From: Guillardia theta CCMP2712 | Taxonomy: Eukaryota; Protista; Cryptophyta | Length of the DNA stretch: 64,000 bases | Assembly: GCF_000315625.1 (NCBI RefSeq) | Contig: NW_005434590.1 | Coordinates: 184,018 to 248,017, forward strand | Reading direction: 5' to 3' | Position numbers and translations under genes: made by a program | Part shown: positions 11,228 through 18,635 of the stretch, piece by piece | Numbering within the stretch: position 1 is the stretch's first letter | Layout of the letters: each line of letters opens with the position of its first letter | Notes under the pieces: generated by a model | Database searches by the model: none | Told to the model about the DNA's origin: nothing | The model's input: only the letters and a program-made list of their open reading frames with translations

Positions 11228-13838
11228 GTCTTCGGTGGCTTGTACCAGCAAACAAAGAAGGTACCGATTGGCTCAGGATCTTTTGCAATGGTACTCGCTC
11301 TCAAATGCTTCATGGAAGCAAGGCATGACGTTGGTACTTGATAGGTTTATGAGGGAATGAACATATCTTCAAGAGAGATTGTAGCTATCAAGAAAGTTAG
11401 CTGGGAGAAACTGGAGAAACAGCCAAGATACATTGAACGACACAAAAACCAGCTGCGAAACGAGTTGGCAGCAATGCAAACGTTGAATCATCCCAACATT
11501 GTGCGTCTACTCCACCACCAGAACACACCCAAGTACTTTGTCATGGTCTTGGAGTTTTGCGCCGGCGGCGATCTAGCTTCTGCCTTGCGGAAACGAAAGC
11601 TTCAAGTGAGTGGGATGGATTTAGTTTGGCATGTGCCAAGTTGACGGATTTGCAGACAAAGAATGAGACGATCGATGAGAATCTTGCTTGCAGACTCACC
11701 AAACAACTAGCCGATGGTCTCAAGGAGATGCGAGTGTTGAACTGGGTGCACAGAGATCTGAAGCCGGGGAATCTGCTCTTGTCATGTGAAAGACTGGAAG
11801 ACGCAACATTGAAGATTGGAGATTTCGGGTTCGCGACTAGGTTGAAATCGGAGAGCTTGGCTCAGACATGGGTTGGATCGCCTTTGTACATGGCACCTGA
11901 GATCCTCACGAAAGAGAGTGGAGGTTACGATGCAAAGGCTGGTGCGCCTCCATCAACTCTTGACTTTCCGATCTCAATGCTGTCACAGATTTGTGGAGCG
12001 TTGGGTGCATCCTGTTTGAGATGGTAAAGGGTAGGCAGGTAGTCGACGCTTTGTTTCTGCTGATGAGAAGATTGTAAGCTTCTTCCCCAGCCTTATGGGT
12101 CAAGCGCACGCGACCCCGAAGAGCTGAAGCAAGACATTAGAAGTGACAACAAGTATCAGCCGGTGACTGCCGTGATCGTCAAGATGTTTCGCTGATGATG
12201 GTCGAGCACAGGAACCGCCAATCTTGCTGAGTGATGAGCTTGAATCTCTGTTAGATGCTCTTCTGTAAGTACAGTTTGAATCTTGTTGTCTGTCGGAGCC
12301 AATGACTTTCGGATTTTAGACAAAGAGTTCCCGCACAGCGAATGTCCTACGACGAGTTCTTTGAACACATTTGGTTCGACATGCTGGAAAGCAATTCGCT
12401 GCCAAACAGCGTCTCAACCAAGATGTTGGGGTTGATGGAGAGCACCACCCAAGAGCAGACAGGAGAGACGGCTGAGAATCATTTCACTGCCAGCAAGTTG
12501 AGGGCATCTGCCAACTCTGACAAGGTCTTGTTACTTGTTGTCCCCATCAGCATCGTGATTTCCCTCTCAACACAGGCCATTTCTCACCTGATTTCCGAAA
12601 TTATGTCACCCACAGCCAACCAAGTCGACACGAAAGTGAAGTCGAAGGTAGAAAAGCGAGATTCTGACATCAGAAAACAATCTTCACCTGCAACAAGTCA
12701 GCACTCCAATCCTGAGGGTTCATCGCGATCCAGCCATGATGCTGAAGAAACCGTTCCGCGACCTGAAGACGAGCCTTCGAAATCGAGGCCAAGACCGACA
12801 GCAGAGAATCCCAGTGAAAGAGTTTCGGAGAGAGTCCGGAGCAAAGATGGAGGACACCCCACAAGGAAGGAGAGCACGCTGCAGAGGATATCGGAATACA
12901 CTCATTTCCACGCTGACGGCAGGCCCATCGACGAAGAGTTCGAGCTGGTAGACAGCATCTATCCCGGCGAGCCCGTGTGGATCGAAGTGAACAAAGGTTG
13001 TGACCCCCGGCAGACCCCGATGGACCAGCAGCGGAGCAAAGGATTCATCCTTGAGCAGAGCGGACTTCCACAGGAGGTTGTTCACGAGGGAAAGAACCTT
13101 GAGCTGCTGATACGAGATGTGATCCAATGCACGCGCGAGATCGTGGAGATCGCAAACGATCGGTTGAGGAGGCAGAGGCCGCTGGCTTCTCAGGCGCTCG
13201 TCCTCTACTTGTGGTCCATGAAGATCGTGCACAGAGCGCTGCTCCAGATGCAGCACATCCAGCGTGCATGCGGAGGCCTGCTTCCTTGCTGCCTCATGAA
13301 GGACTGGCAGGATTCGATCCTTGGGCATCTCGCTGACGACTATGAGAAGGCAAAGATCGCCATGCGCCTTTGCATCGAGTCCTCCAAGTCGTCCGAGTGT
13401 AGTTGGGTGACAACAGGAGGGAACCTCAACGATCACGCCATGGCGTCTCCCGCTGCTCCTCGACCTGATCGCATCGCCTACGACACGGCGATCAGGAGCG
13501 CGAGGGATGCGGCGACGAGAGAGCTGCTGTATGGGTCGGAGGAGTCAGTCAAAGACACCAAGGTGCTCTACCAGCGGGCAATCCTCCTCCTCTGCTCGCT
13601 CATGCTCGATGGGAGGGGCTCAGCACGCGACATGGAGATTCTCTCCATGTACTCGGGGATGCTAGTGGAGCGTATCGAGCTGCTGGCTGCCAAGGGGGAG
13701 GGACGGGGAGCAGACGGCATGGCGGAGCTGGTGAGGAGGTGCAGTACTGTTGGGCGACTGTGGAGCGACAACATGCTTAGGGGGGCTCCATCGTACACGA
13801 CCAGGAGCTTCATGGGGAGGGCAGGGCCTGTACCTTGA
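11228..13838 (+). CDS. ATG1: ATG1/ULK-family serine/threonine kinase (multi-exon; start codon not resolved)
   Basis: Spliced kinase domain: IGSGSFAM|VYEG, VAIKK, HPNIVRL, LEFCAGGDL, VHRDLKPGNLLL, LKIGDFGFA, GSPLYMAPEIL, YDAKA|DLWSVGCILFEM. A Ser-rich linker precedes a C-terminal tandem-MIT/EAT-like region (QALVLYL...IAYDTAIRSARDAATRELL...LYQRAILLL). Confidence 0.85.
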
Positions 13839-13879: not shown

Positions 13880-16800
13880 TTAGTTTCCCACAGCTTTTGT
13901 GTTTTGAATCGACTGCCAGTCCTCGAACTCCTGCCATGACCAGACTTGAGCGGCTTGATTGGGAGGCGAGGAGGATAGAGGAGGCAGGGGAGGCGAGGGA
14001 TGAAGTGGAGGCAGATTGAGGTGGAAGGGAGGGGGAGCAAGCAGCAGATTCGCACCTTGAGCACCAGCCTAACAATGCTGAGATTGAGCGGTTTCGTAGT
14101 GTAGCGGTTCATTCCTGTGTGCCATGCTAGTCAGGAGCAACGATGACGAGGGGAGGGAGGGGAAGGGGAGAGAGACGAGAGGGAGGGAGGGAGGGAGGGA
14201 GGGAGGGAGTGGAAGGGGAGGGAGGGAGAGGAAGGGAGGGAGGGAGGGAGGGAGAGAGGGAGGGAGGGAGGGAGGGAGGGAATCGAGTCAAGTGCTCACC
14301 CGCATTGAGACAGTCCGTCTCATCAGTTGTCGCAGCATGAGCCGTCATGGCGATTATGTAGTAGGGACGCTCGTTGGGGGCCGCCTGACCAGCATGTCAA
14401 CAGAGCAAGAGAGCCTGTGAGCGAAGAGGGACGAGATGACAGGGGAGATGGAGGAAAGAAGAGGGAGGAGACAGCAGGGAGGATCGAGGAAGGGGAGGGG
14501 GAAGGGAGGAAGAAGCAACACGAGGAAGAGGAGGCAGGAGGGAGCGATAGGAGGGATATCCTGAGATCACCTTGGCCTCCCACTCGCGGATCTTCATGGT
14601 GGCTTCAATGCCGTCCATCAGGGGCATGCGAATGTCCATAATGATGAGGTCGAAGTAATGACGCCGATTGGTTGCCAGATTGACTCCTTCGACGCCTGCC
14701 ATGCTTGTCAGAGCCAAGACCAAGCAGACGGGAGAAGAGCAGAGCGGGAGCAGAGTCAAGGGGAGGAGAGGGGAAGCAGAGGAGTGGCGAGGGGAAGGGG
14801 AGGAGAGGGAGTGGAGGGGGAGGAGAGGGGAGGGGAGGGGAGGAGAGGGAGGGGGAGGAGAGGGAGGGGAGGGGGAGGAGAGGGAGTGGAGGGGGAGGAC
14901 AGGGAGTGGAGGGGGAGGAGAGGGGAGGGGGGGGGAGGAGGAGTGGTTTGTCATTCACCGTTGTTTGCAACTTCTACTTCGAAATTTTCTTTTCCTGAAA
15001 GCAAGAGTGAATCCACCACCAATTCCTCCTCCTACCCATCCCGACTGCCTACCACCTCCCTCCCCCTCCCTGCTTTCTTCTTCGCTCACCTAAAGTTTTC
15101 TGAAGCATCGCAATCACAACTTTCTGGTTGACAACTTGATCCTGGCGAGAGGTCAGAATGACGAGGGAGGAGGACAGGAAGGAGCAAGAGAGGAAGCGAG
15201 GGGGACCATGGGGCATGGGCAAGAAGGAAGAAGAAACGAGCAGGAGGCGTGAGAATCGATGAAGCAGCAGGGGGCAAGGAGGAGATGCCAGGAGGGGGCT
15301 GAGAACAAGGAGCATCAACAACCTCCACGATGAGGATTCGCATCTTGGAGATGGGCTGAGCATTGTTTGTCGCCGAGAGCGAGTTGTTGGACTCCTTCGT
15401 CGCATCCTTCCCCCCGTTTATTTCCTGCACTATGTGCTGGGAGTACATCAGCACGCCAGGAGGGAGGAGGGCAACACAGTCACCAGGAGTTTCGAGTACA
15501 AGGCAGACATCTTGACTGGGCGCAGAACGAGCTTGTGCAGATCGCAGGATACCTGTGAGTGCGAGAGATCAGCGATACTCCCTTCCCTTGCCCCTAACGC
15601 CTCCTTCCCCTCCTTTCCCCCCACGCCCCTCTTGCTCCTCCTCCTCCATCCCCTATCCTTCCTCACCTTGTACTTGCCACCCCCCTGCTCGTCGAGATAA
15701 CCAACGACGAGCAAGCTGTTGAGTTCATCCTTGCTCCAGCCATCCAGCAGCCCGTTCTGCAGCTGACTATCGATGATGAGCACCGAGGGCCTACCCTCCT
15801 TCGCCTCCTTCTCCTTCTTGTCCCTGAGCTCTGCCTTCAGTCGCTCCATCTGCTTCAGCGTCAAGTCCATGGCGGACGCCGCTGTGAAGATATCGTCGAT
15901 ATCCATCCCCCAGAATCTGAGCATCTCCTTCATCATCGTCTTCGTTGGACCCTCTGGCAGCACCAGTCGAACTTTTCCCCTGCTCACAGTCAGTCCGCAG
16001 CCCCTCCCCCTCCTCCTCATCCCTTCTCTCCCTCCTCCCACCTCCTCTCCTCTCCCCTCCGCGTCCCCAAAATCAAACTCACACCCTCCATCTCCATTGC
16101 ACACCCTCCTCGCCTCCTCCCTTCTTCCACCTCCTCCCCTTTCCCTTCCTCCTCTCCTCTCTCCTTCACCAACCCCTGCCCCTCCCCGTCTCGCCTCACC
16201 TCAGCGAGTCCCTGGCCATGAACTTGGGGAACGTGAGCTCGAAGTCCCGTCCGGAACAGACAGGGAGGGGAACGACGATGCGGAAGGTCGTTCCCCTCCC
16301 GTCGGTGTTGCTGACGCACTCGATGGTCCCGCACATGGCGCTCACGATCCTCTTGGTGATGGCGAGCCCGAGGCCGGTGCCTCCGTTGTTGCTCATGTGC
16401 TTCGAGGGCAGCTGGGGAAGAGCAGGAGTCAGCGGGAGGAAGGGGAATGAGGGGAAGTGAGGAACAACTGAGAGGAAAGCGGATGGCCCGGAGAAGAGGA
16501 CGGTGCAGTTGGTGCGGAGAGGATTGGAGAGGCATGGAGGAGGAAAAGAGCGAATAGAAGTCGAGGGGAGCGGAAGGGGGAAGGAGGGAAACGCCGGACA
16601 GGAAGTCAGGGGTAGGAGGCAGGGGGCACCTGCGAGAAGGGCTTGAAGAGCAGGTCCTGCTGCTCCAAGGGGATCCCCTCCCCGTTGTCCCAAACTTCAA
16701 GGCACACGAACGCCGAGTCCGCCGGGGCTTCTTCCTGCAGTCGGACCGACAGGATCACCTGCCCCCCTTCGTCTCTGCAGAATTTCACGGCGTTGTCGCA

Positions 16801-18635
16801 GAGGTTAATCAGGCACTGGCGCAGACGGAAGCTGTCCCCAAGCAAAAACGGGCAAGTTCCCAGCTTGCAGCTCAAGCACAGCTGGACAGCAAAGTCCACC
16901 TGCTTCCCGCTGACTCGAGCCGCCATGATATCGCTAAGCTCGTCGCTGAGCTCGCCGAGGTGGAAGGGCTTCTCGGTGAAGTCGATGGAGGAAGGAATCA
17001 TCTCGTGCTTGCTCGACTGGCTCCCATCGTCCGACCCGTCCGCCTTCGCCTCCAGCTTCGCATACTCGAGCACCTGGTTGATAATGCCCAGGAGGGCCTC
17101 GGCTGAGGTGAGGGAGGAGCTCACGTACTCGCGGTGGATGGAGTTCAGGTCGTCGGCCTCGAGGAGGAGCGAGTTGAAGGCGACGACCGAGTTGAGGGGC
17201 GTGCGGAGCTCGTGGCTGATGTTGGCGATGAACTTGCGGGAGAGTCGGGCGGAGGTCTCTGCCTCTACACACGCCATCTGCAGCGCTCGGTTCATCACCT
17301 CAGTTCGCAGCACCGTCCTCTCCTTGCTGTCCTTCTCAGTCTCCATCTGCTGTAGCCTCAGCGTCGCCACCGTGTCGAGAATGCAGAAGTTCCCAGTCAT
17401 GAGCGCGACTGTGTAGATGGCCTTGGCAAGAACGTCCACGAAGGTACGGCAGATGCTGAACTGAGTGTCGTCGAGAACGTGGAGGTGGTGGAGAATGTGG
17501 AGGGTAGGGAACGACAGCCACAGCAGGTACGTGTAGATCTGAAGGCCGCGCAGCGAAGTGATCTCGTAAGTAGTCGCGGCCTGCTTCACGTTCCGGTCGA
17601 TGATCTGCCATATTCTGTAGTAGACGACCACGAAGCAGGAGGCGGCGCAGCAGAACACGGCCCATCCTATGAAGCAGGAGCCGATGATGTTGTGAGTAAG
17701 GCCCAGCACGAGCATCAGCTCGTCCCAGCAGATCGCGTTGATCACCAACGGCCAGTCAGGAACCAAGTTCTCCTCCATGGAAGTACCCAGGCTTGCAAGG
17801 ACGAGGATCATGATGGGGGTCGTGCACATCCATTGCATGAAAAACTGGACGGCGATCGGCTCGCCTGTGGTGTCGTACATAGGGGTGAAAACGTCCAGGA
17901 CGGTCGAGACGTACACGACAAAGGCAACCATGTTGATGAAGAGAGCTAGGCTGTTCAGCTGTCGCTTCTTTGCAGAGACCTGTATGGAAAGAGAGACGAA
18001 GATGAGCAACACGTCACAAGCCAACATCGTCGTTATCACCTGGAAAACCATCCCTGATATGTCCATGATGATGCAAACTCCGAAGATGAATGCTGCTAGC
18101 ACCTGCAGCATCGCATGAGAACAAGAAAACATTCTGCAGTGTCAACGCACATTCACAAACTTCGATTTGTCCAACGTGACCTCGTCAGATTGTGCGGAAA
18201 ATCCCATCTTGGGCTTGCAATATCCCGATAGCACCCAACTTCCATACACAAACCCAACGTATATGAAGCACCACACGATGAACAGAGCTACTCCAGGCAT
18301 TTCTTTCTGGGCCTTCTTGATTCTTGTAGAAAAACTTCCTTTCTCGTCATTGGAGCCCTGGGTAACCGAGGATTAGACGGAATGTCAATTTCTCGATTTT
18401 CTATGCAAGCATGTTTACAAGACAAGAACCGACAAAAAGTATTGCACACAATCATCTGAGTAATACAATCATCATAGTAATACAAGCACATCAGTTTCCA
18501 AGGAAGCCTTCTGATTCAGGACACAAGGATTGTGAGAAAAGATCAAGCCTCACTAACTGACTTCAAACTAGCACTTACAGAGTCGCTGATGAACGACGAA
18601 CTCTTTGTCTTAGTATGGAATGAGTTCTGCGACAT
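13880..18635 (-). CDS. Histidine kinase rhodopsin: 8-TM microbial rhodopsin - HisKA - HATPase - pseudo-receiver - receiver
   Basis: Rhodopsin helix C QFFMQWMCTTP, helix D WDELMLVLG, helix F LWLSFP, helix G VDVLAK (retinal Lys codon 17422-17424). Kinase: H-box FIANISHELRTPLN, N-box RLRQCLINLCDNAVKF, G1 DNGEGI, G2 GGTGLGLAI. Receiver: RILIVE|DQVVNQKV...FDLIIMDIRMPLMDGIEAT...IIAMTAHA...CLNA|GMNRYTTKP. Last exon EFEDWQSIQNTKAVGN*. More than 10 GT-AG introns; the ATG at 18635 is tentative. Confidence 0.92.

What the first reader, a model, noticed from the sequence alone, without database searches (positions are those of the whole stretch)
13880..18635. Cyclase-less histidine kinase rhodopsin: a light-gated hybrid kinase with tandem pseudo-receiver and receiver
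Seen: an extra TM helix (VALFIVWCFIYVGFVYGSWVL) precedes a 7-TM rhodopsin with intact D-x-x-x-K. An intact HisKA/HATPase follows, then a degenerate receiver (has VLIID but lacks the N-terminal acidic pair and has LRP instead of xKP), then a canonical receiver, and the protein stops. Known: characterised green-algal histidine kinase rhodopsins (HKR1/2c-Cyclop type) typically end in a nucleotide cyclase. Inference: this protein has no built-in effector, so it should pass phosphate to an Hpt protein and a separate response regulator, i.e. a rhodopsin-driven multistep phosphorelay. HKR-like genes may already be catalogued in cryptophytes, but I know of no defined output pathway.
Basis: partly seen in the sequence, partly recalled or inferred. 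Interest (0 to 1): 0.8.

Follow-up and report, generated by a model that had tools for sequence, protein, structure and literature searches.

The report
Cyclase-less rhodopsin histidine kinase gene
This is a real, probably expressed algal gene for a light-sensing rhodopsin fused to a two-component histidine kinase that has no built-in cyclase, but this protein type and its proposed phosphorelay output are already described in other algae, so it is a new member of a known family.

Summary
On the minus strand, 18635-13880, a 14-exon gene with all GT-AG introns encodes a 930-aa protein. Its order is TM0, a 7-TM microbial rhodopsin (D291-x-x-x-K295), a helical linker, HisKA (H365), HATPase_c, a degenerate receiver, a canonical receiver (E795/D796/D845/T880/K902), then 15 residues and a stop. 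No cyclase is present, and none is found in the 7 kb downstream.

The model aligns end to end with transcript-derived homologues; the closest, P0121, is 52% identical. Indirect run-index evidence suggests the gene is expressed and spliced. A fold prediction on the closest homologue supports the "pseudo-receiver" as a CheY-like fold that lacks the catalytic set.

- Cyclase-less rhodopsin histidine kinases (Rhod-HK/Ot-HKR) are described in Mamiellales, with an HPT-to-response-regulator relay proposed since 2015.
- Guillardia theta HKRs were catalogued in 2020.
- The 8-TM topology and the loss of the D85 counterion are known HKR traits.

The scan noted this same stretch in an overlapping window, and noted the same architecture at three other loci of this genome.

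The pseudo-receiver is conserved across two HKR clades and was not described in the literature I could search. It is the only modestly new detail.

The parts
13880..18635 (-). Whole HKR gene, start codon to stop codon: 14 exons, 930 aa. Exons, high to low: 18635-18579, 18357-18151, 18102-18040, 17979-16630, 16411-16200, 15979-15667, 15552-15484, 15436-15323, 15141-15090, 14994-14959, 14695-14571, 14384-14300, 14114-14056, 13930-13880.
   Evidence: all introns are GT-AG, the CDS is 2793 nt and the frame is intact; aligns end to end with transcript-derived homologues with no junction artefacts; indirect evidence of expression and splicing.
18229..18291 (-). TM0, the extra N-terminal transmembrane helix (aa 42-62), preceded by a Lys-rich segment.
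   Evidence: Hydropathy peak of 2.02. Homologues P0003, P0121 and P0123 align a TM helix at this position.
17353..18159 (-). 7-TM microbial rhodopsin domain (aa 86-318), interrupted by a 48-nt intron (18150-18103) and a 60-nt intron (18039-17980).
   Evidence: Pfam PF01036, E 2.7e-21. PDB sequence matches to rhodopsins and Rh-PDE.
17422..17436 (-). D291-V-L-A-K295, equivalent to bacteriorhodopsin (BR) D212 and the Schiff-base lysine K216.
17833..17844 (-). Helix C positions F155 (BR R82) and Q158 (BR D85): the counterion position is neutral and the arginine is missing.
   Evidence: Alignments to 8xx8 and Rh-PDE 7d7q. Family residue table.
17245..17352 (-). Helical linker from TM7 to the DHp helix (dimerisation and His-phosphotransfer part of HisKA) (aa 319-354).
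   Evidence: Conserved across the family. The segment just before it (aa ~310-322) aligns to the TM7-proximal segment of Rh-PDE 7d7q.
17032..17244 (-). HisKA/DHp domain with the phospho-accepting H365 (codon 17214-17212).
   Evidence: Pfam PF00512, E 7e-17. H365 is invariant in 16 of 16 family rows.
16253..16845 (-). HATPase_c catalytic domain (aa 488-612) with N505, the G1, F and G2 boxes; split by intron 16629-16412.
   Evidence: Pfam PF02518 on both exons. Residue table.
15419..15978 (-). Pseudo-receiver (aa 631-763), with P638, E639, D700, G723 and R745 at CheY positions 12, 13, 57, 87 and 109.
   Evidence: No Pfam hit. hhalign against the true receiver matches only 23 columns. An AF2 model of the homologous P0121:661-788 has pLDDT 89 and a (beta-alpha)5 topology. 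The listed Foldseek PDB hits (top 50) are almost all receiver or pseudo-receiver domains, TM 0.50-0.67.
13928..15343 (-). Canonical receiver (aa 789-915) spread over seven exons, with E795, D796, D845 (phospho-acceptor), T880 and K902.
   Evidence: Pfam PF00072 on the central exon and full-length hits on homologues. Residue table.
13880..13927 (-). 15-residue C-terminal tail and the TAA stop; no effector domain.
   Evidence: Homologues from complete transcripts end at the same point. Minus-strand stop-free segments over 7 kb downstream give no Pfam hit.

Best explanation
The locus encodes a histidine kinase rhodopsin (HKR, a type Ib 8-TM enzyme rhodopsin) of the cyclase-less kind.

Shown by sequence and homology:
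- An N-terminal TM0 and a 7-TM opsin with the Schiff-base lysine K295 and the D291 counterion.
- A conserved helical linker running from TM7 into the DHp helix.
- An intact kinase core: H365, N505, G1, F and G2 boxes.
- A CheY-fold pseudo-receiver without the phospho-chemistry residues.
- A canonical receiver with D845.
- A stop 15 residues later.

Inferred mechanism:
- Retinal isomerisation changes the conformation of the TM7-DHp helix and so modulates autophosphorylation of H365.
- The phosphoryl group passes within the dimer to D845.
- Because no effector is attached, it then passes to a separate Hpt protein and response regulator(s).
- By analogy with 2c-Cyclop, light more likely lowers than raises kinase and phosphotransfer flux, but the sign is unknown.
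- The pseudo-receiver most likely acts as a docking or regulatory spacer between the catalytic domain and the receiver.
For: - Domain hits.
- Complete 14-exon GT-AG model of 930 aa.
- End-to-end alignment with transcript-derived full-length homologues (52% identity to P0121 over 891 columns).
- Maximum-likelihood tree places the protein sister to P0121 (100/99 support) inside a 16-row clade that includes G. theta GUITHDRAFT_107802. The 90% cluster of P0121 contains G. theta GUITHDRAFT_89769.
- Catalytic residues are conserved.
- Pseudo-receiver fold: with a weak supporting lead.
- No cyclase anywhere: the protein ends after the receiver, there is no Pfam hit on the minus strand for 7 kb downstream, and a convergent kinase gene ends 41 bp away.
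- No PF00211 in any listed relative.
- Expression and splicing: eight runs guessed to be RNA hold 0.12-0.53 of the locus words (seven of them 0.42-0.53; exons make up 56% of the queried stretch) but none of the words of intron 16412-16629, whereas DNA runs hold that intron fully.
- Mechanistic precedent: 2c-Cyclop shows light-inhibited His-to-Asp transfer (PMC6284317). The Rhod-HK to HPT to response-regulator model is in PMC4343026 and PMC12704426.
Against: - Splice junctions therefore rest on homology and GT-AG logic, and the run kinds are guesses.
- The start codon and first exon are uncertain.
- No Hpt gene or Hpt-like motif lies in the 64-kb window, and the genome could not be searched.
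- The retinal pocket lacks both R82 (F155) and D85 (Q158), so photochemistry cannot be assumed to be normal, although HKRs without D85 are photoactive (PMC7693036).
- Retinal binding, kinase activity and the sign of light regulation are all untested.
Confidence: 0.8

Rival explanations
1. The protein is the same, but the terminal receiver is the output itself. Phospho-D845 would act through protein-protein contacts, dimerisation or feedback on the kinase (a phosphate sink), with no Hpt relay.
For: No Hpt motif lies in the window, and the scan's notes mention no Hpt in this genome. The conserved pseudo-receiver next to the receiver could provide an intramolecular regulatory surface.
Against: Eukaryotic hybrid kinases ending in a receiver generally signal through Hpt proteins (established two-component knowledge). 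The Mamiellales model includes a conserved HPT (PMC12704426). Absence of a motif from one 64-kb window means little.
Confidence: 0.15
2. The opsin domain is a light-blind or retinal-free module, and the protein is a membrane-anchored hybrid kinase regulated by something other than light.
For: F155 replaces the nearly universal R82, Q158 replaces D85 and H270 replaces W189.
Against: K295, D291, W159 (BR W86), W263 (BR W182) and P267 (BR P186) are retained. Characterised HKRs also lack D85 yet are photoactive (PMC7693036; PMC6284317). The lysine is invariant in all 16 family rows.
Confidence: 0.07
3. The gene model is incomplete, and the native transcript carries a further effector domain such as a cyclase through exons outside 13880-18635.
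For: There is no read-level check of the 3' end. The 5' end is uncertain, and homologues have longer N-termini.
Against: Complete transcript-derived homologues stop at the same position after the receiver. No domain hit appears on the minus strand for 7 kb downstream. A convergent gene ends 41 bp away.
Confidence: 0.03

Closest known systems
Mamiellales Rhod-HK / Ot-HKR (Ostreococcus tauri histidine kinase rhodopsin)
   Same: The domain order is rhodopsin, HisKA, HATPase, REC, with no cyclase (PMC12704426). The proposed output is HPT to response regulators (PMC4343026). The long 1250-1330-aa relatives found here, which I take but did not prove to be of this kind, align a pseudo-receiver with the same RP-x-K motif.
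   Different: That group forms a separate, strongly supported clade only about 28-30% identical to this protein, with large insertions in the opsin and linker regions. Helix C residues differ: V at the D85 position there, Q here. The lineage also differs: the nearest named kin of this gene are cryptophyte.
Guillardia theta putative HKRs (Gt_107802, Gt_122016; also GUITHDRAFT_89769)
   Same: Same clade and same architecture. Identity is 42-46% to GUITHDRAFT_107802 and 52% to P0121, whose 90% cluster holds GUITHDRAFT_89769. These were predicted as HKRs in PMC7714340.
   Different: This is not the same gene. The published primers and the catalogue alignment do not contain it. It has F rather than R at the R82 position, unlike Gt_107802 and Gt_122016.
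Chlamydomonas/Volvox 2c-Cyclop and Cop5/HKR1
   Same: An 8-TM type Ib opsin fused to a histidine kinase and a response regulator, with loss of D85 (PMC6284317; PMC7693036). Light control of His-to-Asp transfer in 2c-Cyclop is the experimental precedent for the mechanism.
   Different: Those proteins are 2200-2550 aa and end in a guanylyl cyclase domain. This one is 930 aa and ends after the receiver.
Hybrid kinases with a receiver-like domain before the true receiver (plant AHK4/CRE1 first receiver, Pfam PF24896; cyanobacterial CikA pseudo-receiver)
   Same: A CheY-fold domain without the phospho-chemistry residues, located C-terminal to the kinase core. CikA's pseudo-receiver is among the fold hits, and an AHK4/CRE1 first-receiver cluster appears as a weak Atlas lead.
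   Different: Pfam finds neither PF24896 nor PF00072 in this module. The resemblance is at fold and position level only, and no common origin is shown.

Membership tests
Histidine kinase rhodopsin (HKR; type Ib enzyme rhodopsin) | Microbial rhodopsin domain with the Schiff-base lysine in helix G | tested here: met
   PF01036, E 2.7e-21. K295 aligns to the retinal lysine of PDB rhodopsins, with D291 four residues before it.
Histidine kinase rhodopsin (HKR; type Ib enzyme rhodopsin) | Extra N-terminal helix giving 8 TM and a cytosolic N-terminus | tested here: met
   There is a hydropathy peak at aa 39-57, ahead of the opsin helices. Homologues have a helix at the same place. The membrane topology itself is predicted, not measured.
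Histidine kinase rhodopsin (HKR; type Ib enzyme rhodopsin) | Fused HisKA with phospho-acceptor His, and HATPase_c with N, G1, F and G2 boxes | tested here: met
   PF00512 and PF02518 hits. H365, N505, D540/G542 and G570/572/574 are conserved.
Histidine kinase rhodopsin (HKR; type Ib enzyme rhodopsin) | C-terminal receiver with the Asp-Asp-Asp-Thr-Lys set | tested here: met
   E795, D796, D845, T880 and K902. PF00072 hits.
Histidine kinase rhodopsin (HKR; type Ib enzyme rhodopsin) | Retinal binding and light-dependent kinase or phosphotransfer activity | not testable with these tools
   Needs expression with retinal, spectroscopy and phosphorylation assays.
2c-Cyclop (two-component cyclase opsin) | C-terminal class III nucleotide cyclase domain | tested here: not met
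   The protein stops 15 aa after the receiver. No Pfam hit appears on the minus strand for 7 kb downstream. No relative carries PF00211.
Cyclase-less Rhod-HK (Ot-HKR type) | Rhod-HisKA-HATPase-REC with no attached effector | tested here: met
   The family definition is from PMC12704426.
Cyclase-less Rhod-HK (Ot-HKR type) | Orthology with the Mamiellales genes | tested here: inconclusive
   The long-protein clade is separate from the window's clade (100/100 support), but those rows carry no organism names and no named Ot-HKR sequence was available.
Receiver domain (CheY-like, PF00072), applied to the first module aa 631-763 | (beta-alpha)5 CheY fold | tested here: met
   AF2 model of the homologous P0121 segment has pLDDT 89.4. 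Foldseek top hits are Spo0F, YycF, DivK, CheY, PhoB and the CikA pseudo-receiver. The test was done on the closest homologue, not on the window's own split sequence.
Receiver domain (CheY-like, PF00072), applied to the first module aa 631-763 | Acidic pair, phospho-acceptor Asp, Thr/Ser and Lys | tested here: not met
   The residues are P638, E639, D700, G723 and R745. Only the Asp position is kept, as D or E in 14 of 16 family rows. There is no PF00072 hit. It is therefore a pseudo-receiver.
Multistep His-Asp-His-Asp phosphorelay | An Hpt domain or a separate Hpt protein and a downstream response regulator | not testable with these tools
   The protein has no Hpt domain and the window has no Hpt-like motif.

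The most novel reading that the evidence does not exclude
The CheY-fold pseudo-receiver between the catalytic domain and the true receiver is a conserved hallmark of cyclase-less HKRs. It is shared by the cryptophyte-type clade and the long, presumably Mamiellales-type clade, and it keeps an acidic residue at the phospho-acceptor position in most members. On this reading it gates light-dependent phosphotransfer, for example by sequestering or presenting the true receiver. It was not described for HKRs in the literature I could search. In this sub-clade it is combined with an opsin lacking both R82 and D85, which may give unusual (UV-shifted or bistable) photochemistry.
Probability: 0.3. Interest if true: 0.45.

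Novelty: new member of a known kind. Interest (0 to 1): 0.3.

Why it matters
It adds a well-supported, full-length gene model to the small set of cyclase-less histidine kinase rhodopsins. It also shows that the family in cryptophyte-like algae is multi-copy and under-annotated: this gene is absent from the published G. theta catalogue, and ORF-style gene calls read through its introns.

No HKR of this kind has a demonstrated kinase activity or output pathway. A compact 930-aa member with an intact kinase and receiver is therefore a practical candidate for the first biochemical test of a rhodopsin-driven phosphorelay, and for asking what the conserved pseudo-receiver does. It does not change what is known about the kinds of photoreceptor that exist.

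Tried and rejected
- **RNA read check.** Those places lie inside the intron between exons 12 and 13. 
- **Word search with the G. theta opsin region** (P0002, residues 1-250) returned only the query itself.
- **Exact-product look-ups** of the big-exon ORF found nothing, so the organism could not be named. Run and organism names are coded.
- **Test that the locus is G. theta Gt_122016 or another catalogued G. theta rhodopsin.** Published primers are absent from the window. The helix C peptide is absent from the catalogue alignment, while the Gt_107802 control was found. Rejected.
- **A 9-TM reading.** The hydrophobic 20-mer after the first opsin helix is a 60-nt in-frame intron, as all homologues lack it. 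Rejected.
- **Unspliced read-through of the last intron.** It gives a proline-rich tail that overlaps the neighbouring gene. The spliced tail matches the homologues' C-termini. Rejected.
- **Sequence-level proof that the first module is a receiver.** Pfam is silent, and hhalign against the true receiver gives 23 columns, E 0.039, probability 1.3%. This was inconclusive, and the fold search settled it.
- **Hpt motif scan of the window:** none found.
- **The large representative search** was not run.
Full report
**What is there.** The stretch 13880-18635 carries a multi-exon eukaryotic gene on the minus strand.
- A raw six-frame reading shows one large stop-free block (18141-16609) and a chain of smaller coding blocks in changing frames. 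CT-rich low-complexity spacers separate them.
- Pfam on the separate blocks gives Bac_rhodopsin (E 2.7e-21), HisKA (7e-17) and the first half of HATPase_c (2e-12) in the large block. The second half of HATPase_c (1.2e-8) is in the next block, and Response_reg (2.7e-7) is further 3'.

- The result is 14 exons, every intron GT-AG, an intact 2793-nt CDS and a 930-aa product.
- Two introns are very short and in frame (48 nt, 18150-18103; 60 nt, 18039-17980), so they read through as ORF. The 60-nt one translates into a hydrophobic 20-mer that looks like an extra helix.
- All homologues lack both segments. The environmental gene call P0001 (99% identical, genomic contig L001) reads straight through the 60-nt one and starts inside the 48-nt one.
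- The model aligns end to end, without junction artefacts, with full-length homologues. Their source contigs are about as long as the genes, and one of them is an MMETSP ORF marked complete.
- The best match is P0121, 52% identical over 891 columns. The spliced C-terminus also matches the homologues' ends.
- The first exon and start codon are the weakest part of the model.

**Expression.** Those places lie inside the intron between exons 12 and 13. I worked beside them and sent none of their letters to any search tool afterwards.

Indirect evidence comes from the run index:
- Ten runs guessed to be RNA hold 0.42-0.53 of the locus words. Exons make up 56% of the queried stretch.
- Eight runs of that kind, seven of which are among these ten, hold none of the words of intron 16412-16629. 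A 2021 DNA run and two 2011 runs hold that intron.
- This fits a spliced, expressed mRNA seen in at least four studies. The run kinds are guesses, however, and one 2014 run holds 74% of the intron words.

**Anatomy**.
- TM0 is aa 42-62, preceded by a Lys-rich segment.
- Seven opsin helices follow. D291-V-L-A-K295 corresponds to bacteriorhodopsin (BR) D212 and K216. BR W86, W182 and P186 are kept.
- The R82 position is F155, the D85 position is Q158 and the W189 position is H270. These assignments rest on alignments to PDB rhodopsins and Rh-PDE.
- A conserved helical linker leads to the H-box (H365). The N, G1, F and G2 boxes are intact.
- The terminal receiver has E795, D796, D845, T880 and K902, which is fully canonical. 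It is followed by 15 residues and the stop.

**The pseudo-receiver.** The module between kinase and receiver (aa 631-763) has no Pfam hit. It matches the family's true receivers by hhalign only over the beta5-alpha5 stretch (23 columns, E 0.039).
- Its alignment across 13 relatives gave a confident AlphaFold model for the closest homologue's segment (pLDDT 89.4, pTM 0.84), with beta-alpha units in CheY order.
- The listed Foldseek PDB hits (top 50) are almost all receiver or pseudo-receiver domains, including Spo0F, YycF, DivK, CheY, PhoB and the CikA pseudo-receiver, with TM 0.50-0.67. An Atlas feature search gives receiver-type clusters as weak leads.
- The catalytic set is not met: the residues are P638, E639, D700, G723 and R745. 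Across 16 family rows only the position-57 acidic residue is mostly kept, Gly at the Thr position is nearly invariant, and Arg-Pro replaces Lys-Pro in most.
- "Pseudo-receiver" is therefore a fair name. The fold test was made on the homologue, because the window's own module is split by an intron.

**No cyclase.** The protein ends right after the receiver.
- The ten longest minus-strand stop-free segments in the 7 kb downstream give no Pfam hit.
- That space is occupied by a convergent gene on the plus strand. It has protein-kinase exons and a C-terminal block with a weak ATG1-like MIT2 hit, and its stop lies 41 bp from the HKR stop.
- None of about 40 rhodopsin-kinase relatives listed carries PF00211, the Pfam nucleotide-cyclase family. 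The search length window excluded proteins over about 1340 aa.

**Relatives.** A maximum-likelihood tree of 22 family rows places the window's protein sister to P0121 (100/99 support).
- The 90% cluster of P0121 contains G. theta GUITHDRAFT_89769.
- Both sit in a 16-row clade with G. theta GUITHDRAFT_107802 and an MMETSP0047 transcript.
- A separate clade of 1250-1330-aa proteins on long contigs has the same domain order and an alignable pseudo-receiver. I take these for the Mamiellales type but could not name them.
- The gene is not one of the catalogued G. theta rhodopsins: the published primers are absent, and its helix C peptide is absent from the catalogue alignment while the control was found.
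The nearest named kin are cryptophytes.
- The scan's notes list this same stretch from an overlapping window, and three more rhodopsin-kinase loci in the same genome. I did not test those.

**Comparison with the literature.**
- HKRs are defined as rhodopsin plus histidine kinase plus response regulator, and only some carry a guanylyl cyclase. The response regulator may act on attached or independent effectors (PMC12558739).
- Mamiellales Rhod-HK has the domains Rhod, HisKA, HATPase and REC. It is placed upstream of a conserved HPT and several response regulators (PMC12704426). This relay was already modelled for Ostreococcus in 2015 (PMC4343026).
- G. theta clade C rhodopsins with kinase domains were predicted to be HKRs in 2020, with no activity or function shown (PMC7714340).
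- The 8-TM topology is established for 2c-Cyclops and Cop5, and light-inhibited His-to-Asp transfer is shown for Cr2c-Cyclop1 (PMC6284317).
- Loss of D85 is a known HKR trait (PMC7693036).
- A search for papers combining pseudo-receiver, rhodopsin and histidine kinase found nothing relevant.

**Verdict.**
- The phosphorelay inference is reasonable but untested. It repeats an existing working model for the same protein type in green picoalgae.
- The gene is a new member of a known kind.
- The modestly new points are the fold-supported, clade-spanning pseudo-receiver and the F/Q pair at the R82/D85 positions in this sub-clade.
- Interest is about 0.3.

Noticed in passing
window 18150-18103 and 18039-17980 (minus strand): Two very short in-frame introns (48 and 60 nt) read through as ORF. 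The 60-nt one translates into a hydrophobic 20-mer that mimics a transmembrane helix. The ORF-style gene call P0001 on an environmental contig includes it.
   Followed up: yes
window 17844-17833 and codon 17499-17497 (H270), minus strand: The retinal pocket has Phe at the BR R82 position, Gln at D85 and His at W189. The same F/Q/H set occurs in P0121, while other clade members have R or H at position 82 and E or Q at position 85. A separate scan note (s1-434770) covers this.
   Followed up: partly
window 11357-13838, plus strand: The convergent neighbour has Ser/Thr protein-kinase exons and a 498-aa C-terminal block with a sub-threshold ATG1-like MIT2 hit (E 5.4e-4). Its stop is 41 bp from the HKR stop, so the two 3' UTRs must overlap or be very short.
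   Followed up: partly
window 14166-14237: These places lie inside the intron between exons 12 and 13; the introns read elsewhere in this gene are CT-rich low-complexity sequence on the coding strand. I worked beside them.
   Followed up: no
window 16412-16629: One 2014 run guessed to be RNA (X2) holds 74% of this intron's words, unlike eight other RNA-like runs that hold none. This points to intron retention or DNA carry-over in that library.
   Followed up: no
L001:1-3331 (environmental contig, ERZ930071): A metagenome contig encodes the big exon at 99% amino-acid identity with a few substitutions. The same species or a close strain therefore occurs in an environmental sample.
   Followed up: partly
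other pieces of the same genome (scan notes s1-430469, s1-434688, s1-435492): At least three further rhodopsin-histidine-kinase loci are noted in this genome, two of them with the same pseudoREC-REC, no-cyclase reading. This suggests a small multigene family, as in G. theta.
   Followed up: no
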